Shown here in pieces: positions 1-47,091 of a stretch of DNA of 64,000 nucleotides. A program made the translations under genes and the position numbers. The notes beneath the pieces were generated by a model, which saw only the letters and a program-made list of their open reading frames with translations, searched no databases and was not told the origin of the DNA. The stretch is taken from assembly GCF_001194135.2 (NCBI RefSeq), contig NC_069001.1, forward strand, positions 3,784,368 through 3,848,367, given 5' to 3'. Within the stretch, counting starts at the first letter, position 1; each line of letters begins with the position of its first letter. Source of the stretch: Octopus bimaculoides (lineage: Eukaryota).

Positions 1-120
1 TATATATATATATATATATATTTATTTATATATATATATATTTATTTATATATATATACATATATATATTTATTTATATATATATATATTTATTTATATA
101 TATATACATATATATATATA
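1..120. repeat. (TA)n microsatellite with TTTA/TACA interruptions
   Basis: Directly visible; abuts the left end of the satellite. Confidence 0.95.
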
Positions 121-3100
121 AAGAAAGAACCAACGACGAATTATCGAACGTACGTACTAACGGACCAATGAACGAACTATCGAACAAAGAAAAGAAAGAA
201 CGATTGAAGGAACGAAAGTATGTACGTAGGTACGAACGTATGTAAGTACGTACGTACGATCGATTGAACGAATGTACGTACGGACGAGCGGACGAAAGAA
301 TAAACGAACGAAAGCATCTACGTACCTCCGTACGTACGAAAGAGCGAATGAACGTATGTACGAACGAACGAAATGAAGGAGCAACCGAACGTACGTACGA
401 ACGAACAAATGTACGAACGAACTAACGAATGAAATTACGTACGTACGTAAGTTCGAAAGAACGAAATATCGTACGAACGAACGCAAGAGCGACTGTAAGA
501 ACGTACATTCGTACGAATGAAATAACGAACGAACGTACGTACATACGTATCTGCGAACGAACGAAGGAAAGAACTAGCTAACGAACGAATGTACTTTCAT
601 ACAAACGTACGTACGATTGAAGGAACGAACGAATGTAAGTATGTACGTAGGTACGAACGAACAAACGAGGAAACGAACGTACGTACGAAAGAACGGACGA
701 TCGAACGAAAGAAACGAAGGAGCAAGCGAACGTACGTACGAACGAACGAACTAACGAATAAACTCACGTATGTACTTACGTATTTACGATCAAACGAACG
801 AACGAATGTACTTAAGTACGTACAAATGAACGAACGAACAAACGCAAGTGCAACCGTAGGAGCGTACGTTCGTACAAATGAAATAACGAACGAACGACCG
901 AACGGACAAACGAACGAACGTACGTAAGAAGGAACGTACGGACGGACGAACGAACGAAAGATCGAAACGAATAAACGTACGTAGATACCTACGAACGAAC
1001 GAGGAAACGTACGTACGTACGAAAGAACGAACGATCGAACGTATGTACGAACGAAGGAGCAAGCGAACGTACGTACTAACGAATAAACTCACGTACGTAT
1101 TACGTATTTACCATCAAACGAACGAACGAATGTACTTAAATACGTACGAACGAACGAACGCAAGTGCGACCGTAGGAGCGTACGTTCGTACGAATGAAAT
1201 AACGAACGAACGTACAGACATACATACGTACGTACGAACGGACAAACGAACGTACGTACGTCCGAACGGACGGACGGACGAACGAACGCACAAACGAAAG
1301 ATCGAAACGAACAAACGTATGTAGGTACCTACGGACGTACGAAGGAACGAACTAACGAACGTACGAAGGAACGAACTAACGAACGTACGAAGGAACGAAC
1401 GTACGTACAAACGAAAGAAGGAACGTACGGACGGACGAACGAACGCACGAACGAAAGATCGAAACGAATAAACGTACGTAGATACCTACGAACGTACGTA
1501 CGAATGCACAAAGGAACAAACGAACGATCCAACGAACGAACGTAAGCACGTACGTACGTACGTACAAACGAACCAACGTACATAAGTACGTATGTACGTT
1601 TGAAAGAACAAACATACGTACATACGTAAGTAAGATCGACCGAACGAACGAATGAAACTACGTACGTATGTACGTTCGAACGAACGAAATATCGTACGTA
1701 CGTAATTACGTATTTACGATCGAACGAACGAACCAACGTACGTATGTAAGTACGTACGAAAGAAAGAACGAGCGATCGAACGAACGAACGCAACAGCGAC
1801 CGTAGGAACGTACGTTCGTACGAATGAAATAACGTACGTACGTACGAACGGACGGACAAACGCACGAACGTACGTACGAACAAAAAAATGAACGTACGAA
1901 CGTAGAAACGTACGTACGAATGAACGAACGAACAAAAGAACGAACGTACGTACGTACGTACGTACGAACGGACCAATGAACGAACGATCGAACTAACCAA
2001 AGAAAGAACGATTGAAGGAACGAACGAATGTAAGTATGTACGTAGGTACGAACGAACGAACGAACACACGAGGAAACGAACGTACGTAAGTACATAGGTA
2101 CGAAACGATCGCACAAATGAAAGAACGTACGTGCGTACGGACGGACGGAGGGACGAAAGAAAGCATCTACGTACCTCCGTACGTGCGAATGAACGTATGT
2201 ACGAACAAACGATAGTAAGTACGTACGTACGAACGAACAAAGTAAACAACGAACGAAATGAAAGAGCAAGCGAAAGTACGAACAAACGTACGTACGAACG
2301 AACGAACGAACTAACGAATGAACTTACGTACGTACGTATGTACGTACGAACGAACAAGATATCGTAGTACGTAATTACATATTTACGATCGAACGAAAGT
2401 ACGTACGTAAGTACGTACGAACGAACGAACGAGTGATCGAACGAACGAAAGCAAGAGCGACCGTAGGTACGTACGTTCGTACGAATGAAATAACGAACGA
2501 AAGCACGGACGGACGAACGAACGTACGTACGTAAGCACGAACGAACGCTCGACCGAACGTATGAACGTACGTACGTACCTACAGACGTACGTACGAACGT
2601 ACGTACGTACGAATGCACAAAAGAACAGACGAACGATCCAACGAACGAACGTACGTACGTCCACACGTATTTAAGTACGTACGTACGAATGAACGAACGA
2701 AAGAACGAACGTACGTACTTTCGTACGAACGAAAGAACGAACGAAGGATCCAACGAACGAACGAACGTACATACGTACGTACGAACGGACCAATGAACGA
2801 ACGATTGAACAAACAAAAGAAAGAACGATTGAAGGAACGAACGAACGAGGAAACGAATGAACGAACGAACGTACGTACGGACGGAGGAAAGAATAAACGA
2901 ACGGAAGCATCTACGTACCTCCGTACGTACGAACGAACGAACGAGCGAATGAACGTATGTACGAACGAACAACAGTACGTGCGTACGTACGAAAGAACGA
3001 AGTAATGAACGAACGAATTAACGAACGAACGAAATGAAGGAGCAAGCGAACGTACAAGCGAACGAACGAACGTACTTACGTACGTACGTATGTACGTACG

Positions 3101-6100
3101 AACGAACGAAATATCGTACGTACGTAATTACGTATTTACGAACGAACGAGCGATCGAACAAACGAACGCAAGAGCGACCGTAGGAACGTACGTTCATACG
3201 AATAAAATAACGGACGAACGCACGTACGTACGAACGACCGAACGGACGGACGAACGAACGGACGGACGAACGAACGTACGTACGTAGGTACGTACGTACG
3301 TACCTACGAAGGAACGAACTAACTAACGAATGTACGTACGTACGAATGCACAAGAGAACAAACGAACGAAAGCATCTACGTACCTCCGTACGTACGAACG
3401 AACGATAGTACGTAAGTACGTAACGAACGAACGAAATGAAGGAGCAAGCGAACGTACGAACTAACGTACGTACGAACGAACGAATGTACGAATGAACTTA
3501 CGTACGTACGTATGTATGTACGTACGAACGAACGAAATATCGTACGTACGTAATTACGTCTTTACGATCGAACGAACGAAGGAAAGTACGTACGTAAGTA
3601 CGTAGGAACGTACGAACAAGCGATCGAACGAACGCAAGAGCGACCGTAGAAACGTACTTTGGTACGAATGAAATAATAAACGAACGTACGTACATACGTA
3701 AGAACGGAACAATGAACGAACGATCGAACAAACAAAAGAAAGAACGATTAAAGGAACGAACGGATGTAAGTACGAACGTACGTAAGTACGAAAGAACGAA
3801 CGATCGAACGAACGATGGTACGTGCGTACGTACGTTCGTACGGACGGACGGACGAAAGAATAAACGAACGAAAGCATCTACGTACCTCCGTACGTACGAA
3901 CGAACGATAGTACGTAAGTACTACGAACGAACGAACAAAATGAAGGAGCAAGCGAACGTACGTACGTATGTACGTACGAACGAACGAAATATCGTACGTA
4001 CGTAATTACGTATTTACGATCGAACGAACGAACGAAAGTATGTACCTAATTACGTACGAACGAACGAACGAGCGATCGAACGAATGCAAGAGCGACCGTA
4101 GAAACTTACTTTCGTACGAACGAAAGAACGAACGTATGTACGTAAGCACGAACGAACGTAGGAACGTACGTACATACCAACGAACGTACGAAGGAAGGAA
4201 CTAACGAACGAACATACGTACGAATGCACAAAAGAACAAAGGAACGGTCCAACGAACGAACGTACGTACGTACGCACGTAGTACAAACGAACCACGTATA
4301 TACGTACGTACGTACGTACGAAAGAACGAACGATCGAACGCAAGAGCGACCGTAGGAACGTACGTTCGTACGAATGAAATAACGAACGAACGAACGTACA
4401 TACGTACGTACGAACGAAAGAACGAACGCATGAACGAACGATCGAACGAACGAACGTAGGAACGTACGTACATACGAACGTACGAACGAAGGAAATAACG
4501 GACGAACGTACGTACGTACGAATCACAAAAGAACAAACGAACGATCCAACGAACGTACGTACGTACAAACGAACCAACGTATATACGTACGTACGTAAGT
4601 ATGAACGAACGTACATACATAAATACGAACGAATGAACGAACATACTTTCGTACGAACGAAGGATCGAATGTACGTACGTACGTACGAATGAACGAACGA
4701 TCCAACGTACGAACGAAAGAATGAACAAACGACGAACGGACGAACGGACCAATGAACGAACGATCTAAGAAACAAAAGAAAGAACGATTGAACGAACGAA
4801 CGCATGTAAGTATGTACGTAGGTACGAACGAACGTACGGACGAACAAACGAGGAAACGAACGTACGTACGAAAGAACGAACGATCGAACGCAAGAGCGAC
4901 CGTAGGAACGTACGTTCGTACGAATGAAATAACGAACGAAAGTACGTACATAGGTACGTACGAACAACCGAACGGACAAACGAACGTACGTACGTACAAA
5001 CGAAAGAAAGAACGTACGTACGTACGAACAAACCAACGTATATAAGTACGTACGTACGAATGATCGAACGACCGAACGAATGAATGTACTTTCGTACGAA
5101 CAAAAGAACGAACGTAAGTACGAATGAACGAACGATCCAACGAACGAACGAATGACGAACGAACGAACGGACCAATGAACGAACGATCGAACAAACAAAA
5201 GAAAGAACGATTGAAGGAACGAACGAATGTAAGTATGTACGTAGGTACGGACGAATGAACGAACGAACAAACGAGGAGACGAACGTACGTACGAAAGAAC
5301 GAACGATCGAACGTATGTACGAAAGAAAGAAACGAAGGAGCAAGCGAACGTACGTACGAACGAACGAACTAACGAATAAACTCACGCATGTACGTACGAA
5401 CGAACGAAATATCGTACGTACGTATTACGTATTTACGATCAAACGAACGAACGAATGTACTTAGGTACGTACGAATGAACGAACGAGCGATCGAACGAAC
5501 GAACGCAAGTGCGACCGTAGGAGCGTACGTTCGTACGAATGAAATAACGAACGTACGTACGAACGACCGAACGGACAAACGAACGAAGGTACGTACAAAC
5601 GAACGAAGGTACGTACAAACGAAAGAACGAACGTACGTATGTACGTACGAACGACCGAACGGACGGACGAACGAACGAACTAACCCACAAACGAAATATC
5701 GAAACGAACAAACGTACGTAGGTACCTACGAACGTACGAAGGAACGAAGTAACGAAGGAACGAAGTAACGAATGAACGTACGAAGTAACGAACGTACGTA
5801 CGTACGTACGAATGCACAAAGAACAAACGAACGATCCAACGAACGAACGTAAGCACGTACGTACGTATGCACAAACGAACCAACGTACATACGTACGTGT
5901 GTACATATGAAGGAACGAACGAAAGAACGAACGTACGTACATACGTAAGTAAGATCGACCGACCGAACGAACGAATGAAACTACGAACGTACGTATGTAC
6001 GTTCGAACGAACGAAATATCGTACGTACGTAATTACGTATTTACAATCGATCGAACAAACGAGCGACCGAACGAACGTACGTACGTACCTACGAACGTAC

Positions 6101-9100
6101 GAAAGAACGAACTAACGAACGAACGTACGTACGTACGTACGAATGCACAAAAGAACAAACGAACGATCCAACGAACGAACGAGAGTACGTACGTAGGTAC
6201 GAACGAACGAAGAAAATGAAGGAGCAAGCGAACGTACAAATGAACGAACGTACGAAGGAAATAACGAATGAACTTATGTATGTACGTACGAACGAACGAA
6301 ATAGCGTACGTACGAACGAACGAAATATCGTACGTACGTAATTACGTATTTACGATCGAACGAACGAACCAAAGTACATACGTAAGTACGTACGAAAGAA
6401 AGAACGAGCGATCGAACGAACGAACGCAACAGCGACCGTAGGAACGTACGTTAGTACGAATGAAATAAACTACGTACGAACGGCCGAACGAACGGACGGA
6501 CAAACGCACGAACGTACGTACGAACAAAAATATGAACGTACGCACGTAAGCACGAACGAACGTAGAAACGTACGTACGTACCTACGAACGAACGAACGTA
6601 CGTACGTACGAATGCACAAAAGAACAAACGAACGATCCAACGAACGAACATACGTATGTAAGTACGTACGTGCAAACGAACCAACGTATATACGTACGTA
6701 CGTACGTACGTACGTACGTACGTACGTACGTACGTACGAATGAACGAACGATCCAACGAAAGAACGAACAAACGACGAACTAACGAACGTACGTACGAAC
6801 GGACCAATGAACGAACGATCGAACAAACAAGAGACAGAACGATTGAAGGAACGAACGAATGTAAGTATGTACGTAGGTACGAACAAACGAGGAAACGAAC
6901 GTACGTAAGTACATACGTACGAAAGAACGAAACGACCGCACAAATGAAAGAACGTACGTGCGTACGGACGTACGGACGGCCGAAAGAATAAACGAAAGAA
7001 AGGATCTACGTACCTCCGTACGTACGAACGAGCGAATGAACGTATGTACGAACGAACGATAGTAAGTACGTACGTACGAACGAACAAAGTAAACAACGAA
7101 CGAAATGAAAGAGCAAGCGAACGTACGTGCGAACGAAAGAACGCACGAACGAACTAATGAATGAACTTACGTACGTACGTATGTACGTACGAACGAACGA
7201 GATATCGTAGTACGTACGTAAGAACGTACGAACGAACGAACGAGTGATCGTACGAACGAACGAGATATCGTAGTAAGAACGTACGAACGAACGAACGAGT
7301 GATCGAACGAACGAAAGCAAGAGCGACCGTAGGAACGTACGTTCGTACGAATGAAATAACGAACGATCGCACGTCCATACGTACGTACGAACGACCGAAC
7401 GGACGGAAGGACAAACGAACGAAAGAACGAACGTACGTACGTAAGCACGAACGAACGCTCGAACGAACCTACGTACCTACGAACGTACGAACGAACGTAC
7501 GTACGTACGAATGCACAAAAGAACAAACGAACGTCTGCACGTACAAACGAACCAACGAATATACGTACGTACGTACGTATGTATGTACGAATGAACGAAC
7601 GAAAGAACGAACGTACGTACATACGTAAGTACCTACAACCGAACGAACGAACGTACCACGTAAGCACGAACGAACAAACGAACGTAGTAACGTACGTACG
7701 CACCTACGAACGAACGAAGGAACGAACGTACGTACGTAAACACGAACGAACGCACGAAAGAACGATCGAACGAACGAACGTAGTAACGTACGTACGCACC
7801 TACGAACGAACGAAGGATCCAACGAACGAACGAAAGAACGAACGAACGACGAACGACGAAAGTACATACGTACGTACGATCGGACCAATGAACGAACGAT
7901 TGAACAAACAAAAGAAAGAACGATTGAAGGAACGCACGAACGAACAAACGAGGAAGCGAACGTACGTAAGTATGTACGTACGAAAGACGAACGATCGAAT
8001 GAACGAACGAGCGTACGTACGGACGGACGGATGGACGGACGAAAGAATAAACGAACGAAAGCATCTATGTACCTCCGTACGTACGAACGAAGGAGCGAAT
8101 GAACGTATGTGCGAACGAACAACAGTACGTACGTACGGACGAACGAACGAAGTAACGAACGAACGAAATGAAGGAGGAAGCGAACGTACAAACGAACGTA
8201 CGTACGTACGTATGTACGTACGAACGAACAAAATATCGTACGTACGTAATTACGTATTTACGATCGAACTAACGAACGAGCGATCGAAGAAACGAACGCA
8301 AGAGCGACCGTAGGAACGTACATTCATACGAATAAAATAACGAACGAACGCACGTACATACGTACGGACGAACGAACGAACGTACGTACGAACGAAAGGA
8401 CGAACGTACGTTCGTGAGCACGAACGAACGCATGAACAAACGCACGAACGAACGATCGAACGAACGAACGTAGGTACGTACGTACGTACCTACGAACGAA
8501 CGAAGGAACGTACGAATGTACGTACGTACGAACGGACCAATGAACGAACGATCGAACAAACAAAAGAAAGAACGATTAAAGGATCGAACGGATGTAAGTA
8601 CGAACGAAAGAACAAACGAACGTACGAAAGATCGAACGAACGATCGTACGTGGGTACGTACGGACGGACGGACGAAAGAATAAACGAACGAAAGCATCTA
8701 CGTACCTCCGTACGTGCGAACGAACGATAGTACGTAAGTACGTACGAACGAACGAACGAAATGAAGGAGCAAGCGAACGTACGAACAAACGTACGTACGA
8801 ACGAACGAACTAACGAATGAACTTACGTATGTACGTACGAACGGACGAAATATCGTACGTACGTAATTACGTATTTACGATTGAACGAACGAAAGTACGT
8901 ACCTAATTACGTACGAACGAACGAACGAGTGATCGAACGAACGAAAGAGCGACCGTAGAAACGTACTTTGGAACGAATGAAATATAGAAAGAACGTACGT
9001 ACGTACGTACGAACGACAGAAAGGACAGACGGAGGAACGAACAAACGTACGTACAAACAAAAGAACGAACGTATGTACGTAAGCACGATCGAACGCACGA

Positions 9101-12100
9101 ATCAACGAACGTAGGGACATACATACGTACCAACGAACGTACGAAGGAAGGAACTAACGAACGAACGTACGTACGATTGCACAAAAGAACAAAGGAACGA
9201 TCCAACGAACGAACGTGCGTACGTACGCTCGTACGTACAAACAAACCACGTACATATGTATGTACGAATGAACGAACGAAAGAACGAACGTACGTACATA
9301 CGTAAGTACGAACGAACGTACTTTCGTACGAATGAACGTACGTACGAACGAACGAACAAACAAGGAAACGAACGTATGTAAGTACGTACGTACGTACGAA
9401 AGATCGAACGATCGAACGCAAGAGCGACCGTAGGAACGTACGTTCGTACGAATGAAATAACGAACGAACGTACGTACGAACGACCGAACGGACGGACGGA
9501 CGAACGAACAAAGGTACGTACGAACGAGAAGAACGAACGCATTAACGAACGATCGAACGAAAGAACGTAGGAACGTACGTACCTAAGAACGTACGAACGA
9601 ACGAAATAACGAACGAACGTACGTACGTACGAATCACAAAAGAACAAACGAACGATCCAACGAACGAACGTACGTACTTGCGTACGTACGTACAAACGAA
9701 CCAACGTATATACGTACGAACGTACGAATGAACGTTGGTACATACGTAAGTACGAACGAATGAACGAACGTACTTTCGTACGAACGAAGGAACGAACGTA
9801 CGTACGTACGTACGTACGAACGATCCAACGTACGAAGGAAAGAACGAACAAACGACGAACGTACCAATGAACGAACGATCGAAGAAACAAAAGAAAGAAC
9901 GATTGAAAGAACGAACCTACGGACGAACAAACGAAGAAACGAACGTACGTAAGGAAGGAAGGACTGAAGGAACGAACGAATGTAAGTGTGTACGTGGGTA
10001 CGAACGAAAGAACGAACGAACGAGGAAACGAACGCACGTAAGTACGTACGTACGAAAGTACGCAGGGACGTGCGTGCGTACGTACGGACGGACGAAAGAA
10101 TAAACGAACGAAAGCATCTACGTATCTCCGTACGTACGAACGAACGAGCGAACGTACGTACGAACGAAATGAAGGAGCAAGCGAACGTAAGAACGTACGT
10201 ACGTACGAACGAACAAACGTACAAACGAACTAACGAATGAAAACAATATCGAACGTACAAAATATCGTACGCACGTAATTACGTATTTACGACGGAAGGA
10301 ACGTACGTTCGTATGAATGAAATAATGAACGAATGTACGTACGTATGTATGTACGAATGAACGAACGAAAGAACGAACGTACATACGTAAGTACGAACGA
10401 ACGAACGTACTTTCGTACGAACGAACGATCGAACGCAAGAGCGACCGTAGGAACGTACGTTCGTTCGAATGAAATAAAGAACGAACGTACGTACGAACGA
10501 AAGAACGAACGCATGAACGAACGATCGAACGAACGAACGAACGTAGGAACGTATGTACCTACGAACGAAAGAAATAACGAACAAACGTAAGTACGTACGA
10601 ATCACAAAACGAACGATCCAACGAACGAACGTACGTCCGTACTTGCGTACGTACGTACAAACAAACCAACGTATATACGTACGTACGTACGAATGAACGT
10701 ACGTACATACGTAAGTACGAACGAATGAACGAACGTTCTTTCGTACGAACGAAGGAACGAACGTACGTACGTACGAATGAACGAACGATTCAACGTACGA
10801 AGGAAAGAACGAACAAATGACGAACGTACGAACGGACCAATGAACGAACGATCGAAGAAACAAAAGAAAGAACGATTGAAAGAACGAACGTACGGACGAA
10901 CAAACGAGGAAACGAACGTACGTAAGTACGTTCGTACGAACGATCGAACGCAAGAGCAACCATAGGAACGTACGTTCGTACGAATGAACTAACGAACAAA
11001 CGTACGTACATACGTACGTACGAACGACCGAACGGACGGCTGGATGAACGAACAAATGTACGTACGTATGAACGATCGAACGAACGAACGAACGAACGAA
11101 CGAACGTAGGAACGTACGTACGTACCTACGAGCGTACGTAAGTACCTATGAACGTACGTACGTAACAACGTACGTAACAACGTACGTACGTACGAACGAA
11201 AGAACGAACGTACGTACGTAGGCACGAACGAACGCTCGAACGAACGTACGTACCTACGAACGTACGAACGAACGATCCAACGAACGAACGTACGTACGTC
11301 CGCACGTACAAACGAACCAACGAATATACGTACGTACGTATATATGTATGAATGAACGAACGAAAGAACGAACGTACGTACATACGTAATTACGTACAAC
11401 CGAACGAACGAACGAACGAAAGAACGTACGTACGTACGTAAGCACGAACGAACGCACGAACGAACGTAGTAACGTACGTACGTACCTACAAACGAACGAA
11501 GGAACGAACGAACGTACGAATGCACAAAAGAACAAACGCACGATCCAACGAACGAACGTACGTACGTACGCACGTATTTAAGTGCGTACGTACGTATGTA
11601 CGTACGAATGAACGAACGAAAGAACGAACGTACGTACGAAGGAACGTAAGTACGAACGAACTAAGAAACAAGGAAACAAACGAACGTACGTACGTACGTA
11701 CGAAAGAACGAGCGATCGAACGCAAGAGCGACCGTAGGAACGTACGTTCGTACGAATGAAATAACGAACGAACGTACGTACGTACGAACGACCGAACCGA
11801 CGGACGGACGAACGAACAAACGTACTTACGAACGAAAGAACGAACGCATGAACGAACGATCGAACGAACGAACGAACGTAGGAACTATGTACCTACGAAC
11901 GAAAGAAATAACGAACAAACGTACGTACGTACGAATCACAAAAGAACAAACGAACGATCCAACGAACGAACGTACGAACGACCGAACGAACGAACGAAAG
12001 CACTTTCGTACGAACGAAAGAACGTACGTACGTACGTAAGAATGAAAGAACGATCCAACGAACGAATGAACGAACAAACGACGAACGAACGTACGTATGA

Positions 12101-15100: not shown

Positions 15101-18100
15101 CGTAAGTACGTACGTACGAAAGTACGAACGAACGTGCGTGCGTACGTACGGACGGACGAAAGAATAAACGAACGAAAGCATCTACGTACCTCCGTACGTA
15201 CGAACGAACGAGCGAATGAACGTATGTATGTACGAACGAACGAACGTACGTACGTACGAACGAACGTACAAACGAACTAACGAATGAAAACCATATCTTA
15301 CGTACAAAATATCGTACGTACGTAATTACGTATTTACGATCGAACGAAAGTATGTACGAACGTGCGATCGAACGAACGAACGCAAGAGCGACCGAAGGAA
15401 CGTACGTTCGTATGAATGAAATAATGAACGAATGTACGTACATACGTGNNNNNNNNNNNNNNNNNNNNNNNNNNNNNNNNNNNNNNNNNNNNNNNNNNNN
15501 NNNNNNNNNNNNNNNNNNNNNNNNNNNNNNNNNNNNNNNNNNNNNNNNNNNNNNNNNNNNNNNNNNNNNNNNNNNNNNNNNNNNNNNNNNNNNNNNNNNN
15601 NNNNNNNNNNNNNNNNNNNNNNNNNNNNNNNNNNNNNNNNNNNNNNNNNNNNNNNNNNNNNNNNNNNNNNNNNNNNNNNNNNNNNNNNNNNNNNNNNNNN
15701 NNNNNNNNNNNNNNNNNNNNNNNNNNNNNNNNNNNNNNNNNNNNNNNNNNNNNNNNNNNNNNNNNNNNNNNNNNNNNNNNNNNNNNNNNNNNNNNNNNNN
15801 NNNNNNNNNNNNNNNNNNNNNNNNNNNNNNNNNNNNNNNNNNNNNNNNNNNNNNNNNNNNNNNNNNNNNNNNNNNNNNNNNNNNNNNNNNNNNNNNNNNN
15901 NNNNNNNNNAACGAACGAACGTACCTACGAACAAAATGAAGGAGCAAGTGAACGTGAGAACGAACGTACGTACGAACGAACGAACGTACAAACGAACTAA
16001 CGAATGAAAACAATATCGTACGTACGTAATTACGTATTTACGACCGAAGGAACGTACGTTCGTATGAATGAAATAATGAACGAATGTACGTACATACGTG
16101 CGTACGAACGAACGCACGAACGTACGAACGTACGTACGTACTTACGAACGTACGTACGTATGAATGCACAAAAGAACAAACGAACGATCCAACGAACGAA
16201 TGTACGTACATTCGTACAAAAGAACCAACGCATATACGTACGTACGTACGTACGAATGAACGAACGAAAGAACGAACGTACGTACATACGTAAGTACGAA
16301 CGACCGAACGAGCGAACGAACGTACGATTGCACAAAAGAACAAAGGAACGATCCAACGAACGAACGTACTACGTACGCACGTACGTACAAACAAACCACG
16401 TATATACGTACGTACGTGTGTATGTACGAATGAACGAACGAAAGAACGAACGTACGTACATACGTAAGTACGAACGAACGAACGTACTTTAGCACGAACG
16501 AACGACGAAGGAACGTACGTACGAACGAACGAACAAGGAAACGAACGTATGTAAGTACGTACGTTCGTACGTACGAAAGAACGAACGATCGAACGCAAGA
16601 GCGACCGTAGGAACGTACGTTCGTACGAATGAAATAACGAACGAACGTACGTACCAACGACCGAACGGACGGACGAACAAACGTATGTACGAACGAAAAA
16701 ACGAACGCATGAACGAACGATCGAACGAACGAACGTAGGTACCTACGAACGAACGAAATAACGAACGAACGTACGTACGTACGAATCACAAAAGAACAAA
16801 CGAACGAACGTACGTGCGTACTTGCGTACGTACGTACAAATGAACCAACGTATATACGTACGTACGTACGAATGAACGTACGTCGTTACGTAAGTACGAA
16901 CGAATGAACGAACGTTCTTTCGTACGAACGAAGGAACGAACGTACGTACGTACGTACGAATGAACGAACGATTCAACGTACGGACCAATGAACGAACGAT
17001 CGAAGAAACAAAAGAAAGAACGATTGAAAGAACGATCGAACGAACGTACTTTCGTACGAATATAAGAACGAACGTACGTACGTACGAATGAACGAACGAA
17101 AGAACGAACGAATGAACGTACGTACGTACGAATGGACCAATGAACGAACGATCGAACAAACAAAAGAAAGAACGAATGTAAGTAGGTACGAAGGAAAGAA
17201 CGAATGAACGAACAAACGAGGAAACGAACGTACATAAGTACGTACGTACGTAGGAACGAACGAACGATCGAACGCAAGAGCGACCGTAGGAACGTACGAA
17301 ATAACGAACGAACGTACGTACATACGTATGTACGAACGACCGAACGGACGGACGGACGGACGGACGAACGAAGAAACGTACGTACGAACGAAAGAACGAA
17401 CGCATGATCGAGCGATCGAACGAACGAAAGAACGTAGGAACGTACGTACCTACGAACGTACGAACGAACGAACGGACCAATGAACGAACGATCGAAGAAA
17501 CAAAAGAAAGAACGAATGAAAAAACGATCGTACGGACGAACAAACGAGGAAACGAACGTACGTAAGTACGTACGTACGAAAGAACGAACGATCGAACGCA
17601 AGAGCGACCGTAGGAACGTACGTTCGTACGAATGAAATAACGAACGAACGTACGTACATACGTACGTACGAACGACCGAACGGACGGCTGGATGAACGAA
17701 CAAATGTACGTACGAACGAACGATCGAACGAACGAACGTAGGAATGTACGTACGTACCTACGAACGTATGTAAGTACCTATGAACGTACGTACGTACATA
17801 CGAATGCACAAATGAACGTACGTACGTACATACGAATGCCCTAATGAATGATCCAACGAACGAACGTACGTACGTAAGAATGAACGAACGATCCAACGAA
17901 CGAATGAACGAACAAACGACGAACGAACGTACGTATGAACGAACGATCGAACAAACAAATGAAGGAAGGACTGAAGGAACGAACGAATGTAAGTATGTAC
18001 GTAGGTACGAACGAAAGAACGAACGAAGGAACGAATGAACAAACGAGGAAACGAACGCACGTAAGTACGTACGTACGAAAGTACGCACGAACGTGCGTGC

Positions 18101-21100
18101 GTACATACGGACGGACGAAAGAATAAACGAACGAAAGCATCTACGTATCTCCGTACGTACGAACGAACAAACGAATGAACGTATGTATGTACGAACGAAC
18201 GATAGTACGTACGTACGAACGAACGAACGAAATGAAGGAGCAAGCGAACGTAAGAACGAACGTAGGTACGAACGAACGAACGTACAAACGAACTAACGAA
18301 TGAAAACAATATCGAAAGAACGAACGTACGTACATACGTAAGTACGAAGGAACGAACGAACGAACGAACGAACGTACTTTCGTACGAAAGAAAGAAGGAA
18401 CGTACGTACGTACGTACGTACGAATGAACGAACGAAAGAACGAACGAACGTACGTACGTACGAATGGACCAATGAACGAACGATCGAACAAACAAAAGAA
18501 AGAATGATTGAAGGAACGAACGAATGTAAGTACGTATGTACGTAAGTACGTAGGAACGAACGAACGATCGAACGCAAGAGCGACCGTAGGAACGTAAGTT
18601 CGTACGAATGAAATAACGAACGAACGTACGTACATACGTACGTACGAACGACCGAACGGACGGACGAACGAACAAACGTACGTACGAACGAAAGAACGAA
18701 CGTATGAACGAACGATCGAACGAACGAACGAACGTAGGAACGTACGTACCTACGAACGTACCAACGAACAAAATAACGAACGAACGAACGTACGAACGGA
18801 CCAATGAACGATCGATCGAAGAAACAAAAGAAAGAACGAATGTACAGACGAACAAACGAGGAAACGAACGTACGTAAGTACGTAAGCACGAAAGAACGAA
18901 CGATCGAACGGAAGAGCGACCCTAGTAACGTACGTTCGTACGAATGAAATAACGAACGAACGTACGTACATACGTACGTACGAACGACCGAACGGACGGC
19001 TGGATGAACGAACAAATGTACGTACGATCGAACGAACGAACGTAGGAACGTAGGAACGTAGGAACGTACCTACGAACGTACGTAAGTACCTATGAACGTA
19101 CGTACGTACCTACGAACGTACGTACGTACCTACGAACGAACTAACGAAAGAACGTACGTACATACGAATGTACAAATGAACAAACGAACAATCCAACGAA
19201 CGAACGTACGTACGTAAGAATGAACGAACGAACAAACGAGGAAACGAACGCACGTAAGTACGTACGTACGAAAGTACGCACGAACGTGCGTGCGTACGTA
19301 CGGACGGACGAAAGAATAAACGAACGAAAGCATCTACGTATCTCCGTACGTACGAAGGAACGAGCGAATGAACGTATGTATGTACGAACGAACGATAGTA
19401 CGTACGTACGAACGAACGAACGAAATGAAGGAGCAAGCGAACGTAAGAACGAACGTACGTACGAACGAACGAACGTACAAACGAACTAACGAATGAAAAC
19501 AATATCGTACGTACGTAATTACGTATTTACGATCGAACGAAAGTACGTACGAACGTGCGATCGAACGAACGAACGCAAGAGCGACCGAAGGAACGTACGT
19601 TCGTATGAATGAAATAATGAACGAATGTACGTACATACGTACGTACGTACGAACGAACGCACGAACGAACGAACGTACCTACGAACGAACGTACGTACGT
19701 ACGAATGCACATAAGAACAAACGAACGATCCAACGAACGAACGTACGTACATACGTACAAAAGAACCAACGCATATACGTACGTACGTACGAATGAACGA
19801 GCGAGAGAACGAACGTACGTACATACGTAAGTACGAATGAACGAACGAAAGAACGAACGTACGTACGTACGAATGGACCAATGAACGAACGATCGAACAA
19901 ACAAAAGAAAGAATGATTGAAGGAACGAACGAATGTAAGTATGTACGTAGGTACGAAGGAAAGAACGAATGAAAGAACAAACGAGGAAACGAACGTACAT
20001 AAGTACGTACGTACGTAGGAACGAACGAACGATCGAACGCAAGAGCGACCGTAGAAACGTACGTTCGTACGAATGAAATAACGAACGAACGTCCGTACGT
20101 AAGAAGGAACGAACGATCCAACGAACGAATGAACGAACAAACGACGAACGAACGTACGTATGAACGAACGATCGAACAAACAAATGAAGGAAGGACTGAA
20201 GGAACGAACGAATGTAAGTATGTACGTACGTACGTACGAAAGTACGCACGAACGTGCGTGCGTACGTGCGGACGAAAGAATAAACGAACGAAAGCATCTA
20301 TGTATCTCCGTACGTACGAACGAACGAGCGAATGAACGTATGTATATACGAACGAACGAACGAAAGAACGAAATGAAGGAGCAAGTGAACGTAAGAACAA
20401 ACGTACGTACGAACGAACGAACGTACAAACGAACTAACGAATGAAAACAATATCGTACGTACGTAATTACGTATTTACGATCGAACGAAAGTACGTACGA
20501 ACGTACGAACATGCGATCGAACGAACGAACGCAAGAGCGACCGAAGGAACGTACGTATAAACGAACCAACGTATATACGTACGTACGTACGTACATACGT
20601 AAGTACGTACGAATGAACGTACGTACATACGAACGAATGAACGAACGTACTTTCGTACGAAGGAAGGAACGAACGTACGTACTTACGAATGAACGAACGA
20701 TCCAACGTACGAAGGAAGGAACGAACAAACGACGAACGTACGAACGGACCAATGAACGAACGATCGAAGAAACAAAAGAAAGAACGAACGTACAGACGAA
20801 CAAACGAGGAAACAAAAGTACGTAAGTACGAAAGAACGAACGATCGAACGCAAGAGCGACCATAGGAACGTACGTTCGTACGAATGAAATAACGAACGAA
20901 CGTACGTACCAACGACCGAACGGACGGACGAACGAACGAACAAACGTACGTACGAACGAAAAAACGAACGCATGAACGAACGTAGGAACGTACGTACGTA
21001 CCTACGAACGTACGATATAACGAACGAACGTACGTACGTACGAATGAACGAACGATCCAACGTACGAAGGAAAGAACGAACAAACGACGAACGGACCAAT

Positions 21101-24100
21101 GAACGAACGATCGAAGAAACAAAAGAAACAACGATTGAAAGAACGAACGTACGGACGAACAAACGAGGAAACGAACGTACGTAAGTACGTACGTACGAAA
21201 GAACGAACGATCGAACGCAAGAGCGACCGTAGGAACGTACGTTCGTACGAATTAAATAACGAACGAACGTACGTACGAACGACCGAACGGACGGGTGGAT
21301 AAACGAACAAATGTACGTACGAACAAACGATCGAACGAACGAACATAGGAACGTACGTACGTACGAACGTACGTAAGTACCTATGAATGTACGTACGTGC
21401 CTACGAACGAAAGAACGAACGTACGTACGTAAGCACGAACGAACGCTCGAAGGAACGTACGTACGTACGAACAAACGAAGGTACGTACGAATGCACAAAA
21501 GAACAAACGAACGATCCAACGAACGAACGTACGTCCGCACATACAAACGAACCAACGAATATACGTACGTACGTACGAACGTATGTACGTATGAATGAAC
21601 GAACGAAAGAACGAACGTACGTACATACGTAAGTACCTACAACCGAACGAACGAACGTACGTTAACACGAACGAACGCACGAACGATCGAACGAACGAAC
21701 GTAGTAACGTACGTACGTATCTACGAACGAACGAACGAACGAACTAACGAACGAATGTACGAATGCACAAAAGAGCCAACACACGATCCAACGAACGAAC
21801 GTACGTACGTACGCACGTACGCACGTATTGAAGTACGTACGTACGTATGTACGTACGAATGAACGAACGAAAGAACGAACGTACGTACGAACGAACGAAC
21901 AAACGAGGAAACAAACGCACGTAAGTACGTACGAAAGAAAGAACGATCGAACGCAAGAGCGACCGTAGGAACGTACGTTCGTACGAATGAAATAACGAAC
22001 GATCCAACCAACGAACGAACGTACGTACGTACTTGCGTACGTACGTACAAACGAACCAACGTATATACGTACGTACGTACGAATGAACATACGTACATAC
22101 GTAAGTACGAACGAATGAACGAACGTACTTTCGTACGAACGAAGGAACGAACGTACGTACGTACGAATGAACGAACGATCCAACGTAAGAAGGAAAGAAC
22201 GAACAAACGACGAACGGACCAATGAACGAACGATCGAAGAAACAAAAGAAAGAACGATTGAAAGAACGAACGTACGGACGAACAAACGAGGAAACGAACG
22301 TACGTAAGTACGTACGTACGAAAGAACGAACGATCGAACGCAAGAGCGACCGTAGGAACGTACGTTCGTACGAATGAAATAACGAACGAACGTACGTACA
22401 TACGTACGTACGAACGACCGAACGGACGGCTGGATGAACGAACAAATGTACGTACGAACGAACGATCGAACGTAGGAACGTACGTACGTACCTACGAACG
22501 TACGTAAGTACCTATGAACGTACGTACGTACCTACGAACGTACGTACGTACCTACGAACGTACGTACATACCTACGAACGTACGTACATACCTACGAACG
22601 TACGAACGAACGAACTAACGAACGATGAACTAGCGAACGAACGTACGTACATACGAATGCACAAAAGAACAAACGAACGATCCAACGAACGAACCAACGT
22701 ATATACGTACGTATGTACGTACGTATGTACGTACGAATGAACGTATGAACGAACGATCGAACAAACAAATGAAGGAAGGACTGAAGGAACGAACGAATGT
22801 AAGCAAGTACGAAGGTACGAACAAAAGAACGAACGAACGAACGAACAAACGAGGAAACGAACGCCCGTACGTACGTATGTACGTACGAAAGAACGAACGA
22901 ACGTGCGTGCGTACGGACGGACGAACGAAAGAATAAACGAACGAAAGCATCTACGTACCTCCGTACGTACGAACGAACGAGCGAATGAACGTATGTATGT
23001 ACGAACGAACGAACGAAATGAAGGAGCAAGCGAACGTAAGAACGAACGTACATACGAACGAACGAACGTACAAACGAACTAACGAATGAAAACAATATCG
23101 TACGTACGTAATTACGTATTTACGATCGAACGAAAGTACGTACGAACATGCAATCGAACGAACGAACGCAAGAGCGACCGAACGAACGTACGTTCGTATG
23201 AATGAAATAATGAACGAATGTACGTACATACGTACGTACAAACGAACGTACGTACCTACGAACGTACTACCGAACGTACGTACGTACGAATGCACAAAAG
23301 AACAAACGAACGATCCAACGAACGAACGTACGTACGTACGTACAAAAGAACCAACGCATATACGTACGTACGAATGAACGAACGTACTTTCGTACGAATG
23401 AAAGAACGAACGTACGTGCGTACGTATGAATGAACGAACGAAAGAACGAACGAACGAACGTACATACGTACGAATGGACCAATGAACGAACGATCGAGCA
23501 AACAAAAGAAAGAACGATTGAAGGAACGAACGAATGTAAGTATGCACCTAGGTACGAAGGAAAGAACGAATGACCGAACGAACGAACCAACGTACTTTCG
23601 TACGAACGAAAGAACGAACGTACGTACGTACTTTAATACGAACGATCCAACGAACGGACCAATGAACGAACGATCGAACAAACAAAAGAAAGAACGATTG
23701 AAGGAACGAACGAATGTAAGTATGTACGTAGGTACCAACGAACAAACGAGGAAACGAACGTACGTAAGTACGAAAGAACGAACGATCGAACGAACGTACG
23801 GACGGACGGACGGACTAAAGAATAAACGAACGAAAGCATCTAAGTACCTCCGTACGTACGAACGAACGAACGAGCGAATGAACGTATGTACGAACGAACG
23901 ATAGTACGTAAGTACGTACGAACGAACGAAATGAAGGAGCGAGCGAACGTACGAACGAACGAAATATCGTACTTACGTAATTACGTATTTACGATCGAAC
24001 GAACGAACCAACGAGCGATCGAACGAACGTACGTACGAACGACCGAACGGACATACGGACGACCGAACGGACTGACGGACGAACGAACGAAAGAACGTAG

Positions 24101-25690
24101 GAACGTACGTACGTACCTACGAAGGAGCGGACTAATGAACGAAAGTACGTACGTACGAATTCACAAAAGAACAAACGAACGATCCAACGTACGCAAGGAC
24201 GTACGTACAAACGAACCAACGTATATACGTTCGTACGTATGTACGTACGAATGGACGAACGACGGACCAATGAACGAACGATCGAACAAACAAAAGAAAG
24301 AACGATTGAAGGAACGAACGAACGAACGAACGAACAAACGAGGAAACGAACGTACGTAAATATGTACGTACGAAAGTACGAACGATCGAACGAACGAACG
24401 CAAGAGCGACTGTAATAACGTACGTTCGTACGAATGAAATAACGAACGAACGTACGTACATACGAACGACCGAACGCACGGAAGGACGAACGAACAAACG
24501 TATGTACGAACGAAAGAACTTACGCACGAATGAACGAACGAACGTAGGAACGTACGTACGTAAATACGAACGTACGTACCTACGAATGCACAAAAGAACA
24601 AACGAACGATCCAGCGAACGAACGTATGTACGTACGCACGCACGTAAGTACGTATGTACAAACGAACTAACGTATATACGTACGTACGTACGAATGAACG
24701 TACGTACGTATATACGTAAATACGAACGACCGAACGAACGTAGTACGAATGAACGAACGATCCGACGAACGAATGAAAGAACGAACGAACGACGAACGAA
24801 CGTACGTATGAACGAACGATCGAACAAACAAATGAAAGAACGAACGAATGTAAGTATGTACGTAAGTACGAACGAAAGAACGAACGAACGTACGTACGTA
24901 TGAAAGAACAAACGATCGAACGAACGAACGTACGTGCGTACGTACGTACGGACGAAAGAATAAATGAAAGAAAGCATCTACGTACCTCCGTACGTACGAA
25001 CGAACTAACGAATGAATTTACGTACGTACGAACAAGATATCGTACGTACGTAATTACGTATTTACGATCGAATGAAAGTACGTACGTACGAACGAACGAG
25101 CGATCGAACGAACGAACGCAAGTGCGACCGTAGGAACGTACGTTCGTATGAATGAAATAACGAACGAACGCACGTACATACGTACGTACGAACGACCGAA
25201 CGGACGGCGAACGAAAGAACAAACGTACGTACGTAAGCATGAACAAACGCACGAACGTACGTACGTACCTACGAACGAGCGTACGTACTAATGCACAAAA
25301 GAACAAACGAACGATTCAACGAACGAACGTACGTACGTACAAACGAACCAATGCATATACATACGTACGTATGTACGTACGAATGAACGAACGAACGTAC
25401 GTAAGTACGAACGAACGTACTTTCATACGAACGAAAGAACGAACGTACGTACGAATGAACGAACGAACGAAAGAACGAACGAACGACGAATGGACCAATG
25501 AATGAACGATCGAAGAAACAAAAGAAAGAACGATTGAAGGAACGAACGAATGTAAGTATGTACGAACGAACAAACGAGGAAACGAATGTACGTAAGTACG
25601 AACGAACGTAGGAGCGAACGAAAGCATCTACGTACCTCCGTACGTACGAACGAAGGAGCGAATGAACGTATGTACGAACGAACGATAGTA
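121..25690 (+). repeat. Complex CpG-rich satellite on a 4-nt lattice (CGAA/CGTA variants) with higher-order modules
   Basis: Continuous ACGA/ACGT-type tetramers. Recurring modules include CGCAAGAGCGACCGTAGGAACGTACGTTCGTACGAATGAAATAACG (about 35-40 copies by eye), AAAGCATCTACGTACCTCCGTACG (about 19) and GACCAATGAACGAACGATCGAACAAACAAAAGAAAGAACG. N gaps at 12332-12873 and 15449-15909. Confidence 0.95.
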
Positions 25691-25855
25691 TATATATATA
25701 TAAATATATATAAATATATATATATATAAATATATANNNNNNNNNNNNNNNNNNNNNNNNNNNNNNNNNNNNNNNNNNNNNNNNNNNNNNNNNNNNNNNN
25801 NNNNNNNNNNNNNNNNNNNNNNNNNNNNNNNNNNNNTATATATGTATTTATATAT

Positions 25856-25886
<31 letters not shown>

Positions 25887-25905
25887 CATACATACACACA
25901 CATAT
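25691..25905. repeat. (TA)n/(TACA)n microsatellite spanning an N gap
   Basis: Directly visible; begins immediately after the last satellite module (...CGATAGTA|TATATA). Confidence 0.9.
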
Positions 25906-29714: not shown

Positions 29715-29945
<231 letters not shown>

Positions 29946-30952: not shown

Positions 30953-30986
<34 letters not shown>

Positions 30987-31317
30987 AACATATTAAATAA
31001 ACATACATATATGTATATACACATACACGTATCTATCTATATATATTATATATATACACACACGCATACATATATGTATACATATGTACAAATACATATA
31101 CATATATATATGCACATACACACACACACATATATATGCATGCATGTATATGCATATACACATCCATGTACATATATACACACATGCATGTATATACATA
31201 TACACATGCATGAACATACATTTATATATATATATGCATATATGCACACATACATATATGTATATATATATATATATATATCCGTGTATATTTGTATGTG
31301 TGGAGAGACATACAAAC

Positions 31318-35553: not shown

Positions 35554-35588
<35 letters not shown>

Positions 35589-35783
35589 CACACATAAAAT
35601 GCATATACCATAAACTCAACACGTACATATGTATCTACATATAGTATTTTATATGTATTATATGTACATACTATATTTATGTATATGTTGCTATATATAT
35701 GGTGTTGCATGTTTCATATATAAAAATATACATCATATGATTAAATATACAAACATATACATACATAGATATATGTATGCATA

Positions 35784-39990: not shown

Positions 39991-40497
39991 TGTGTAACAA
40001 TATAACAAACAATCAACCATTTTCACACACATACACACACTGGAAAACATTTGGTAATTCCATATATACATATATACACATGCATATATAAAAAGGAGTT
40101 GATGATTCATTCATGCATTACTCAACATGCATGTGTGTGAATGTGTATATACATACATACATATATAAACTCATGAACACACGTATGTTTATGTGTACAA
40201 ATGAAAGAGTGCTCAATACATTATGTAGAATTTTATATTTATAAATAAACAATTGGTGATTCACTCAATTCTCCCTTGAGAAATATGTAAATGATCACAC
40301 ACCTGAGAGGAATGCTGAGTAATGTACAAATGAATGACCAACTTTTGCATATCTATCTATCTAGCATATATATACACATATATTGACATATATATACATA
40401 TATATGTTATGTATGTGTGTGTGTATATATATATATATATGCAGATATATAGATATATATTTATTTATATATGCACATATAATGGCATATTATTCAA

Positions 40498-40530
<33 letters not shown>

Positions 40531-40574
40531 TAAATACATGCACACACATTATACATACATTATGTCTATCTCTT

Positions 40575-40631
<57 letters not shown>

Positions 40632-41366: not shown

Positions 41367-41424
<58 letters not shown>

Positions 41425-46340: not shown

Positions 46341-46372
<32 letters not shown>

Positions 46373-46461
46373 CTATGCATATATATAGACATCTATATAT
46401 GTATATACACATAGACATACATGAATGTGTGTGTCCATGTATGTACATATATATATATGTA

Positions 46462-46517
<56 letters not shown>

Positions 46518-47050: not shown

Positions 47051-47091
<41 letters not shown>

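What the first reader, a model, noticed from the sequence alone, without database searches (positions are those of the whole stretch)
121..25690. 25-kb satellite written in a 4-nt 'alphabet' on an almost unbroken lattice
Seen: the apparently complex modules parse cleanly into tetramers one or two substitutions from CGAA/CGTA. Examples are cgaa-cgca-agag-cgac-cgta-ggaa-cgta-cgtt-cgta-cgaa-tgaa-ataa and cgga-ccaa-tgaa-cgaa-cgat-cgaa-caaa-caaa-agaa-agaa-cgat-tgaa-ggaa. Position 4 is nearly always A, position 3 is mostly A/T, and positions 1-2 carry most variation. One recurrent 1-nt register shift occurs (cgaa-A-tgaa-ggag-caag). Orientation never switches over 25.6 kb. Inference: this is a snapshot of a simple microsatellite maturing into a complex satellite by point mutation then block amplification, with indels strongly disfavoured. 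That would fit either slippage in multiples of 4 or a structural or binding constraint. I do not recognise it as a described satellite family.
Basis: partly seen in the sequence, partly recalled or inferred. Interest (0 to 1): 0.72.

Follow-up and report, generated by a model that had tools for sequence, protein, structure and literature searches.

The report
Octopus satellite built from 4-base units
A 25.6-kb stretch of the California two-spot octopus genome is a one-directional, CpG-packed tandem repeat that grew out of a CGAA/CGTA four-base microsatellite by mutation and block copying; it is a tidy, apparently undescribed example of a long-known kind of satellite DNA, not a new mechanism.

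Summary
The lattice is real. From 121 to 25,692 the lag-4 match is 0.68-0.70, and 53% of in-register tetramers are exactly CGAA or CGTA. A further 36% are one substitution away. Orientation never switches. The lattice is not "almost unbroken": phase tracking finds 73 register shifts, all ±1 nt, about one per 337 nt. They fall into about 8 module-linked recurrent classes plus about 20 singletons. Indels are common between repeat copies, and 73% are multiples of 4. Modules recur in a conserved order (P-Q-T-X-U-W-Y-Z-R-S-M-V) with irregular spacing. Blocks of 0.2-1 kb share 78-99% identity, and the youngest lie centrally, where both assembly gaps sit. The origin by mutation plus block amplification is supported. 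"Indels strongly disfavoured" and a binding constraint are not needed, because 4-nt slippage, AA-run slips and GC→AT bias explain the pattern. The window is Octopus bimaculoides chromosome CM046621.1, about 3.78 Mb. No described match was found, but Repbase/Dfam and cephalopod genomes could not be searched. It is a new member of a known kind, analogous to human HSat2/3.

The parts
1..120 (.). Left flank: TA-rich microsatellite (48-nt periodic TATATA.../TTTATTTA). The window starts inside it.
   Evidence: TRF period 48, 2.4 copies; sequence read.
121..12331 (+). Array segment A (12.2 kb): CGAA/CGTA lattice with 46 register shifts. It is the older part, with best-paralogue identity mostly 80-89% up to about 9.5 kb.
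12332..12873 (.). Assembly gap 1 (N, estimated length). Its flanks dovetail: 12068-12331 matches 12874-13141 at 96-97% identity with one 4-nt indel.
12874..15448 (+). Array segment B (2.6 kb), with 6 register shifts. It lies in the youngest zone.
15449..15909 (.). Assembly gap 2 (N, estimated length). The flanks are diverged paralogues of the same unit segment. The S-to-W distance across the gap (528 nt) is close to the canonical value of about 557 nt.
15910..25692 (+). Array segment C (9.8 kb), with 21 register shifts. It ends abruptly in ...CGAACGAACGATAGTA followed by TATATA.
25693..25905 (.). Right flank: TA/TAAATA microsatellite interrupted by a 100-N gap (25737-25836), followed by unique sequence.
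4335..4382 (+). Example of module R-S (CGAA-CGCA-AGAG-CGAC-CGTA-GGAA-CGTA-CGTT-CGTA-CGAA-TGAA-ATAA). It has 8 exact copies and 33 within 4 mismatches.
5168..5219 (+). Example of module P-Q (CGGA-CCAA-TGAA-CGAA-CGAT-CGAA-CAAA-CAAA-AGAA-AGAA-CGAT-TGAA-GGAA). It has 3 exact copies and 23 within 4 mismatches.
3030..3046 (+). Example of the recurrent +1 register shift in module W (CGAA-A-TGAA-GGAG-CAAG). About 19 copies exist.
12065..12096 (+). Example of the recurrent -1 register shift (CAAA-CG_A-CGAA, one A lost). About 15 copies exist, usually just upstream of module P.
6693..6740 (+). Longest perfect run: (CGTA)11 plus CGAA. The (CGTA)n part is self-complementary and alternates pyrimidine and purine.
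9600..23500 (+). Young, more homogenised core. Best-paralogue identity reaches 96-99%, and partners typically lie 2.7-3.6 kb or 5-8 kb away.

Best explanation
This is a non-coding satellite array in Octopus bimaculoides, on chromosome CM046621.1 at about 3.784-3.810 Mb. It descends from a compound tetranucleotide microsatellite, (CGAA)n/(CGTA)n.

Four ordinary processes shape it.
1. In-register replication slippage and unequal exchange add and remove sequence in 4-nt quanta. This keeps the lattice locally intact (shown).
2. Point substitutions with a GC→AT bias erode mainly the C and G of each unit (shown).
3. Occasional ±1 slips occur, mostly in the AA run (shown).
4. Repeated duplication of blocks from 0.2 kb to several kb copies the mutated stretches. 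This produces module families in a conserved order but with irregular spacing, and a younger, more homogeneous core (shown).

The extreme CpG density persists most probably because octopus intergenic and repeat DNA is almost unmethylated, so CpG is not hypermutable there (inferred). No sequence-specific function is indicated. The array is most likely neutral satellite DNA (inferred).
For: Lattice and alphabet.

Quantised indels: 598 of 814 alignment gaps, and 498 of 678 distinct inserted segments, are multiples of 4. P-to-S copy lengths are mostly congruent mod 4.

Register shifts:
- There are 73 shifts, all ±1 nt. 61 of them are the gain (27) or loss (34) of one base in the AA run.
- The shifts recur with their modules, which shows that amplification followed mutation.

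Modules and blocks:
- Module order P-Q-(T)-X-U-W-(Y)-Z-R-S-M-V, plus a short variant P-Q-X-V-R-S.
- No fixed long period.
- Blocks of 78-99% identity, with the youngest in the centre.

Mutation bias:
- Young paralogues differ at lattice positions 1-4 at rates 0.086/0.059/0.069/0.031.
- The CpG positions show 68 transitions against 96 transversions, so there is no CpG-transition excess.
- The overall spectrum is GC→AT biased.

CpG: observed/expected is 3.21 in the array against 0.32 in the rest of the window.

Organism and position: with PMC8967140.

Same principle elsewhere: a roughly 950-nt (CGAA)n-derived compound minisatellite sits in an unrelated metagenome contig, L072 1040-1995.

Human HSat2/3 are described as diverged arrangements of an ancestral 5-bp repeat, and such arrangements are called a common feature of satellites across taxa (PMC4022460).
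Against: - Frame-breaking indels occur at about 0.02 per substitution. That is 2-5 fold below a generic 0.05-0.1 small-indel ratio (my background knowledge). No octopus-specific neutral control could be built, so mild selection for register is not excluded.
- PMC9476566 reports relatively higher methylation on satellites than on other repeats. The unmethylated-CpG argument is therefore inferred, not shown for this array.
- Genome-wide copy number, chromosomal context left of the window and presence in other species are unknown.
- C↔A at position 1 is the commonest recent difference, and this is unexplained.
Confidence: 0.8

Rival explanations
1. The lattice is maintained by selection. In this reading the array is a functional platform, for example centromeric or pericentromeric chromatin, or a binding array for a CpG-reading or sequence-specific protein. 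Out-of-register or CpG-destroying changes would be purged.
For: - ±1 shifts are only about 0.02 per substitution.
- Position 4 (A) is the most conserved, both overall (0.89) and among young paralogues (0.031 differences per site).
- CpG observed/expected is 3.2 in a flank with 0.32.
- Orientation is strictly uniform.
- Human HSat3 has been proposed to act as a transcription-factor binding platform (bioRxiv 10.1101/2024.10.22.616524; title and abstract only).
Against: - 73 shifts are tolerated, and all four phases are occupied.
- Frame-shifted modules are among the most amplified.
- 47% of units are already mutated, and 38% have lost CG.
- The position-specific pattern matches plain GC→AT bias.
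- There is no regular monomer or nucleosome-scale period.
- Only one 25-kb locus has been seen.
Confidence: 0.1
2. The array is largely an assembly artefact: a short-read assembly has stitched together or collapsed reads from many dispersed (CGAA)n-type loci, so the 25-kb mosaic does not exist as such.
For: - The window carries 14 N gaps, with estimated gap sizes typical of a scaffolded short-read assembly.
- Both gaps inside the array sit in the most homogeneous zone, and their flanks dovetail or are paralogous.
Against: - Contiguous gap-free stretches of 12.2 and 9.8 kb are made of copies diverged by 5-20%, which short reads can resolve.
- Module order is collinear and consistent throughout.
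- Orientation and composition are uniform.
- Collapse would make the array shorter than it really is, not create it.
Confidence: 0.06
3. The array is the internal tandem-repeat region of a transposable element, or derives from a transposable-element fragment, rather than from a microsatellite.
For: Some transposable elements carry internal minisatellites (my background knowledge). The array has sharp ends.
Against: - 89% of all units lie within one substitution of CGAA or CGTA across every module, so no non-lattice core exists.
- Translated ORFs give only low-complexity matches, at most 53% identity.
- There are no Rfam hits.
- The ends abut TA microsatellites, with no terminal repeats noticed in the sequence read at either end.
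Confidence: 0.03

Closest known systems
Human satellites 2 and 3 (HSat2/3), derived from the pentamer CATTC
   Same: - Large tandem arrays made of diverged arrangements of a very short ancestral unit.
- The short-unit lattice is still detectable.
- Subfamily-specific longer blocks arise by amplification of mutated stretches.
- Orientation is uniform within arrays (PMC4022460).
   Different: - The unit here is 4 nt with two co-dominant letters (CGAA and CGTA), unrelated in sequence to CATTC.
- Only one 25.6-kb locus is known, against megabases in human.
- The array is extremely CpG-dense (observed/expected 3.2).
- Heterochromatic location and copy number are unknown.
Cryptically simple sequence, and the classical mutation-plus-amplification model of satellite origin (Southern's guinea-pig alpha-satellite; Tautz, Trick and Dover's 'cryptic simplicity'). 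Cited from my own knowledge, not from a paper read here.
   Same: A short repeat accumulates substitutions, and longer mutated blocks are then re-amplified. Slippage generates scrambled arrangements of related short motifs.
   Different: None in principle. This is a new example in a cephalopod, with an unusually legible lattice.
Compound or interrupted tetranucleotide microsatellites, e.g. the (CGAA)n loci found in metagenome contigs
   Same: Same motif, and the same slippage in 4-nt steps. 114 of 120 sampled loci are pure (CGAA)n, and locus L072 shows a 950-nt compound derivative.
   Different: - Those loci are at most 164 nt of pure repeat, or about 1 kb when compound. This array is 25.6 kb.
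- Only 53% of units here are perfect, and the longest perfect run is 12 units.
- This array has kb-scale duplicated blocks.
Higher-order-repeat satellites of the alpha-satellite type
   Same: Head-to-tail array; a younger, more homogeneous core with more diverged edges.
   Different: There is no fixed monomer of about 100-200 bp and no regular higher-order period. Module spacing is irregular.

Membership tests
Simple-sequence-derived complex satellite (HSat2/3-like kind) | Long head-to-tail tandem array in a single orientation | tested here: met
   25.6 kb; 0 minus-strand self-hits out of 916; uniform A>>T.
Simple-sequence-derived complex satellite (HSat2/3-like kind) | An ancestral unit of a few bases is still detectable as a lattice across the whole array | tested here: met
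   Lag-4 match 0.68-0.70; 89% of units within 1 substitution of CGAA or CGTA.
Simple-sequence-derived complex satellite (HSat2/3-like kind) | Longer mutated blocks re-amplified, giving shared variants in many copies | tested here: met
   Module families of 15-35 copies in conserved order; shared frame shifts; blocks of 78-99% identity.
Simple-sequence-derived complex satellite (HSat2/3-like kind) | High genomic copy number and/or heterochromatic location | not testable with these tools
   Only this window is available. Protein-level and metagenome or viral DNA searches found no further copies. Cephalopod genomes and reads are not searchable here.
HSat2/3 family proper | Derivation from the CATTC/GAATG pentamer | tested here: not met
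   The period is 4, not 5, and the consensus is CG[A/T]A.
Microsatellite (tetranucleotide, compound or interrupted) | Repeat unit of 1-6 nt | tested here: met
   Period 4.
Microsatellite (tetranucleotide, compound or interrupted) | Short array (tens to hundreds of bp) of high purity | tested here: not met
   25.6 kb; 53% perfect units; longest perfect run 12 units.
Regular higher-order-repeat satellite (alpha-satellite type) | Fixed monomer length and a regular higher-order period | tested here: not met
   No autocorrelation peak beyond the multiples of 4; a broad offset histogram; TRF finds only period 4.
Centromeric satellite | Association with CENP-A chromatin or a cytological centromere | not testable with these tools
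   The position is about 3.78 Mb on a 40.06-Mb chromosome. No chromatin or cytogenetic data are available.
CpG island (vertebrate-style definition) | CpG observed/expected above 0.6 together with GC of at least 50% | tested here: not met
   Observed/expected is 3.21, but GC is only 44.8%. No promoter association was tested.

The most novel reading that the evidence does not exclude
The array may be a functional, CpG-dense chromatin platform. With 3,944 CpGs in 24.6 kb it carries roughly ten times the genome average, which I derived from the genome-wide CpG count in PMC9476566 and a genome size taken from my own knowledge. In this reading its 4-nt register and CG cores are kept by selection or biased conversion. 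It could be, for example, a cephalopod centromere-associated or pericentromeric repeat, or a docking array for a CpG- or methyl-CpG-binding or sequence-specific factor. That would be analogous to the proposal that HSat3 is a transcription-factor binding platform.
Probability: 0.07. Interest if true: 0.65.

Novelty: new member of a known kind. Interest (0 to 1): 0.3.

Why it matters
The searches of the paper library made here turned up no description of a cephalopod satellite DNA, and one coleoid repeat survey explicitly discards simple repeats (PMC8967140). This array is a clean, readable record of how a microsatellite becomes a satellite. Each step can be read off one locus: unit slippage, point mutation, ±1 slips and block duplication. 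It could serve as a teaching or modelling case for tandem-repeat dynamics. It is also a natural probe for FISH, for methylation studies, and for asking what octopus centromeres and heterochromatin are made of. The contrast in CpG density (observed/expected 3.2 against 0.32) makes it a local test of whether CpG decay in octopus depends on methylation. It does not reveal a new mechanism.

Tried and rejected
1. Looking for the family elsewhere at protein level.
- The translated 547-aa satellite ORF against 5.8 billion proteins gave only low-complexity hits, at most 47% identity over at most a third of the query.
- The exhaustive search of 1.84 billion representatives with ORF 9102-10037(-) gave 915 hits, none above about 53% identity.

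2. Exact-ORF look-ups, intended to extend the locus leftwards or to find other contigs. None was on record.

3. Module R-S 28-mer in metagenome and viral contigs: 0 hits.

4. Generic (CGWA)10 in metagenomes: 120 loci, nearly all short pure (CGAA)n, with none sharing modules.

5. Building an octopus-specific neutral indel:substitution control from the Kir-gene flanks of a related Logan sample. Only the coding region aligns (84% nt identity), so no control was possible.

6. Testing whether 4n insertions are exact tandem copies of their neighbours. This was uninformative because gap placement is arbitrary.

7. A more sensitive self-BLAST failed. One run had invalid gap costs and one timed out.

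8. Rfam scan of the window: no hits.

9. Literature searches for a described cephalopod satellite or an AACG/ACGT repeat: nothing specific.

10. Rejected on the evidence: a regular higher-order repeat, a transposable-element origin, and coding potential. The long minus-strand ORFs follow from stop-poor composition, 9 against 29 stop triplets per kb.
Full report
**Origin of the window.** The window's intact 471-aa inward-rectifier K+ channel ORF (50207-51622, minus strand) is recorded exactly once. The record is NCBI assembly GCA_001194135.2, chromosome CM046621.1 (40,062,750 bp), at 3,834,574-3,835,989. GCA_001194135 is Octopus bimaculoides (PMC8967140). The window therefore starts near 3,784,368, and the array lies at about 3.784-3.810 Mb. 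The window has 14 runs of N. Three concern the finding: 12332-12873, 15449-15909 and 25737-25836.

**Is the lattice real?** Yes.
- Inside 121-25,690 the fraction of identical bases at lag 4 is 0.68-0.70. It is about 0.20 at lags 1 and 3 and 0.12 at lag 2. This holds in every 1-kb window. The rest of the window shows no such signal apart from TA-type microsatellites.
- TRF sees only period 4, with 68-70% matches.
- A four-state Viterbi parse gives the position matrix C 0.75, G 0.83, A 0.58/T 0.36, A 0.89.
- It yields 6,109 in-register tetramers. CGAA is 29.5% and CGTA 23.3%. Overall 52.8% are exact, 36.5% are one substitution away, 9.8% two and 0.9% three. Base composition alone predicts 1/10/33/40/16%.
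- Orientation never switches. Of 916 off-diagonal self-BLAST hits, none is on the minus strand. A stays at 0.39-0.44 and T at 0.11-0.16 in the 1-kb windows that lie wholly within the array; the two end windows, which include the TA flanks, reach T 0.20.

- The parse finds 73 register shifts, all ±1 nt: 46 in segment A, 6 in B and 21 in C. That is one per roughly 337 nt, or 84 units. All four absolute phases are occupied.
- The count is 73 for any penalty from 6 to 12 nats. Five shuffled, perfectly in-register token strings gave 0 false shifts. A simulation shows the parser recovers about 85-98% of planted 1-nt indels, more at lower indel density.
- 61 of the 73 shifts are the gain (27, CGAA+A) or loss (34, CG_A) of one base in the AA run.
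- By context they fall into about 8 recurrent, module-linked classes:
  - CAAACG_ACGAA, about 15;
  - AGATCGAA-A-CGAATAAACGTA, about 5;
  - CGAATC_ACAAAAGA, 4-5;
  - CAAACAAACC_ACGTATATA, 4-5;
  - GATATCGTA_GTACGTAATTAC, 3-4;
  - two classes with two copies each.
- About 20 singletons remain, so there were roughly 28-30 independent events.

**The gaps.**
- Gap lengths are only estimates, so register across them cannot be known.
- With the nominal lengths, the absolute phase changes by one at each gap. That carries no information.
- At gap 1, the last 264 nt before the gap (12068-12331) align end-to-start with the first 268 nt after it (12874-13141). Identity is 96-97% with one 4-nt indel. Other copies (14961-15214, 17906-18168) are just as similar.
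- So either the contig ends overlap and the gap is spurious, or the assembler broke at a young repeat.
- At gap 2, the two flanks are more diverged paralogues of one unit segment. The module distance across the gap (S to W, 528 nt) is close to the canonical 557 nt.
- Both gaps sit in the most homogeneous part of the array. The real array is therefore probably somewhat different in length from the assembled one.

**Higher-order structure.**
- There is no fixed long period. Autocorrelation simply decays over a few hundred bases as phase is lost. The histogram of self-hit offsets is broad.
- Distinctive modules nevertheless recur in a conserved order, P-Q-(T)-X-U-W-(Y)-Z-R-S-M-V and back to P. 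This long unit is roughly 0.9-1.3 kb. A short variant, P-Q-X-V-R-S, is about 0.34-0.4 kb. Spacers vary in length.
- Self-alignments give blocks of 0.2-1 kb at 78-99% identity.
- Best-paralogue identity is 80-89% in the left 9 kb and the last 2 kb. It reaches 96-99% between about 9.6 and 23.5 kb, with partners typically 2.7-3.6 or 5-8 kb away.
- This is the usual picture of a satellite with a younger, homogenised core and older edges, built by repeated segmental duplication.

**Indels.**
- Indels are not rare. In 352 paralogous alignments of at least 150 nt there are 814 gaps against 7,467 mismatches.
- 598 gaps (73%) are multiples of 4: 293 of 4 nt, 154 of 8, 115 of 12 and 32 of 16. The other 216 are not, and 132 of those are 1 nt.
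- Counted as distinct inserted segments, the split is 498 against 180.
- Homologous U-to-S segments range from 189 to 609 nt. P-to-S segments range from 148 to 300 nt, and most P-to-S lengths are congruent mod 4.
- The lattice therefore survives because the dominant length-changing process is quantised in units, not because indels are excluded.
- Frame-breaking shifts amount to about 0.02 per substitution: 73 shifts against about 3,590 substitutions from the ideal lattice.
- Generic small-indel:substitution ratios of 0.05-0.1 (my background knowledge) would give about 160-300 shifts. The depletion is at most a few-fold.
- The sequence has no homopolymer longer than the AA/AAA runs, and that is exactly where the shifts occur.
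- I could not build an octopus-specific control. The nearest relative available, Logan contigs carrying a 95%-identical Kir protein, aligns only in the coding region at 84% nt identity.

**Substitution pattern.**
It has a plain explanation.
- Among single-substitution units, changes of the C or G towards A or T number 1,229, against 327 C↔G changes. Position 4 shows 199 A→G/C changes.
- Among non-overlapping young paralogue pairs (at least 88% identity), the per-site difference is 0.086, 0.059, 0.069 and 0.031 at positions 1-4.
- Position 3 is dominated by A↔T (51 of 77), which is the interchange of the two letters CGAA and CGTA.
- A↔T is 3.4 times commoner at position 3 than at position 4. 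This suggests replacement of a unit by its neighbour through in-register slippage or conversion. That is an inference.
- CGTA and CGAA units are each clustered. The chance that a CGTA unit is followed by another CGTA is 0.37, against its overall frequency of 0.23.

**CpG density.**
- The array holds 3,944 CpGs in 24,569 bases, with observed/expected 3.21 and GC 44.8%. The rest of the window has observed/expected 0.32 and GC 35.5%.
- At the two CpG positions, young paralogues differ by 68 transitions and 96 transversions, so there is no CpG-transition excess.
[quoted passage not shown] Methylation is concentrated in gene bodies and is very low in intergenic DNA and transposons, although satellites are reported as relatively higher (PMC9476566).
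- The simplest reading is that these CpGs are not hypermutable because they are unmethylated in the germline. That is inferred and directly testable with the published bisulfite data.

**Related sequences elsewhere.**
- None of the family was found.
- Translated satellite ORFs gave only low-complexity matches. The minus strand is stop-poor, with 9 against 29 stop triplets per kb.
- Exact look-ups found nothing.
- The R-S 28-mer is absent from the metagenome and viral collections.
- A generic scan for ten perfect CGWA units found 120 metagenome loci. 114 are pure (CGAA)n of at most 164 nt and 3 are mixed.
- One locus, L072 1040-1995, is a roughly 950-nt compound minisatellite (AGAA-ACAA-CAAA-CGAA...) on the same lattice but with unrelated modules. 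This shows the same maturation process acting independently in another organism.
- Cephalopod genomes, raw reads, Repbase and Dfam are outside the tools.

**Comparison with known systems.**
- The array works like the classical simple-sequence-derived satellites. [quoted passage not shown]
- The mutation-then-amplification model and "cryptic simplicity" are decades old (my own knowledge).
- It is not a member of HSat2/3, because the unit differs. It is not a regular higher-order-repeat satellite, because there is no fixed period. It is not an ordinary microsatellite, because it is far too long and impure.
- Literature searches found no described cephalopod satellite of this kind, and one coleoid repeat survey discards simple repeats.

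**Verdict.** The origin story is supported. The "indels disfavoured" and constraint inference is not needed. This is an apparently undescribed, unusually legible and CpG-dense example of a well-known class. A functional reading, such as a chromatin or centromere platform, cannot be excluded but has no positive support.

Noticed in passing
window 50207-51622 (-): Intact single-exon 471-aa inward-rectifier (GIRK-like) K+ channel ORF with Pfam IRK + IRK_C. The best named relatives are gastropod 'GIRK3-like' proteins at 72-75% identity. An unnamed Logan protein (P0001) is 95% identical at protein level and 84% at nucleotide level, and its flanks do not align to the window.
   Followed up: partly
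window 25900-64000 versus 121-25692: CpG observed/expected is 0.32 (GC 35.5%) in the ordinary part of the window, against 3.21 (GC 44.8%) in the array. That is a ten-fold contrast across a sharp boundary.
   Followed up: partly
window 12068-12331 and 12874-13141: The contig ends on either side of assembly gap 1 dovetail at 96-97% identity with one 4-nt indel. The gap may be spurious, with overlapping ends, or it may be a break at a young repeat copy.
   Followed up: yes
L072 1040-1995 (metagenome contig Ga0126343_10093646): An independent compound minisatellite of about 950 nt on a CGAA lattice, with repeating AGAA-ACAA-CAAA-(CGAA)n, in an unidentified organism. It shares the principle but not the modules.
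   Followed up: partly
window 121-25692, young paralogue pairs: C↔A at lattice position 1 (CGAA↔AGAA) is the commonest recent difference (41 of 97), ahead of the CpG transition C↔T (32). A↔T at position 3 is 3.4 times commoner than at position 4. Both are unexplained.
   Followed up: no
window 29724-29940, 30965-31281, 34900-35600, 36160-36280, 40366-40612, 41397-41489, 46315-46511, 56866-57016, 58390-58440: There are many (TA)n/(TATACA)n-type microsatellites. Most of the window's other N gaps open directly in them, so short-read assembly evidently broke at these repeats.
   Followed up: no
window 47051-47100, 47797-47931, 57255-57297, 59481-59544, 63561-63853: Trinucleotide runs: (ATG)n, (TAC)n, (AAT)n, and an (ACT)n/(CACTAC)n tract of about 290 nt at the right end of the window.
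   Followed up: no
window 121-25692, minus strand: The minus strand is stop-poor, with 9 against 29 stop triplets per kb. It therefore carries dozens of spurious ORFs of 150-950 codons (FVRS/YVRT-rich), which could be mis-called as genes by prokaryote-style gene finders.
   Followed up: yes
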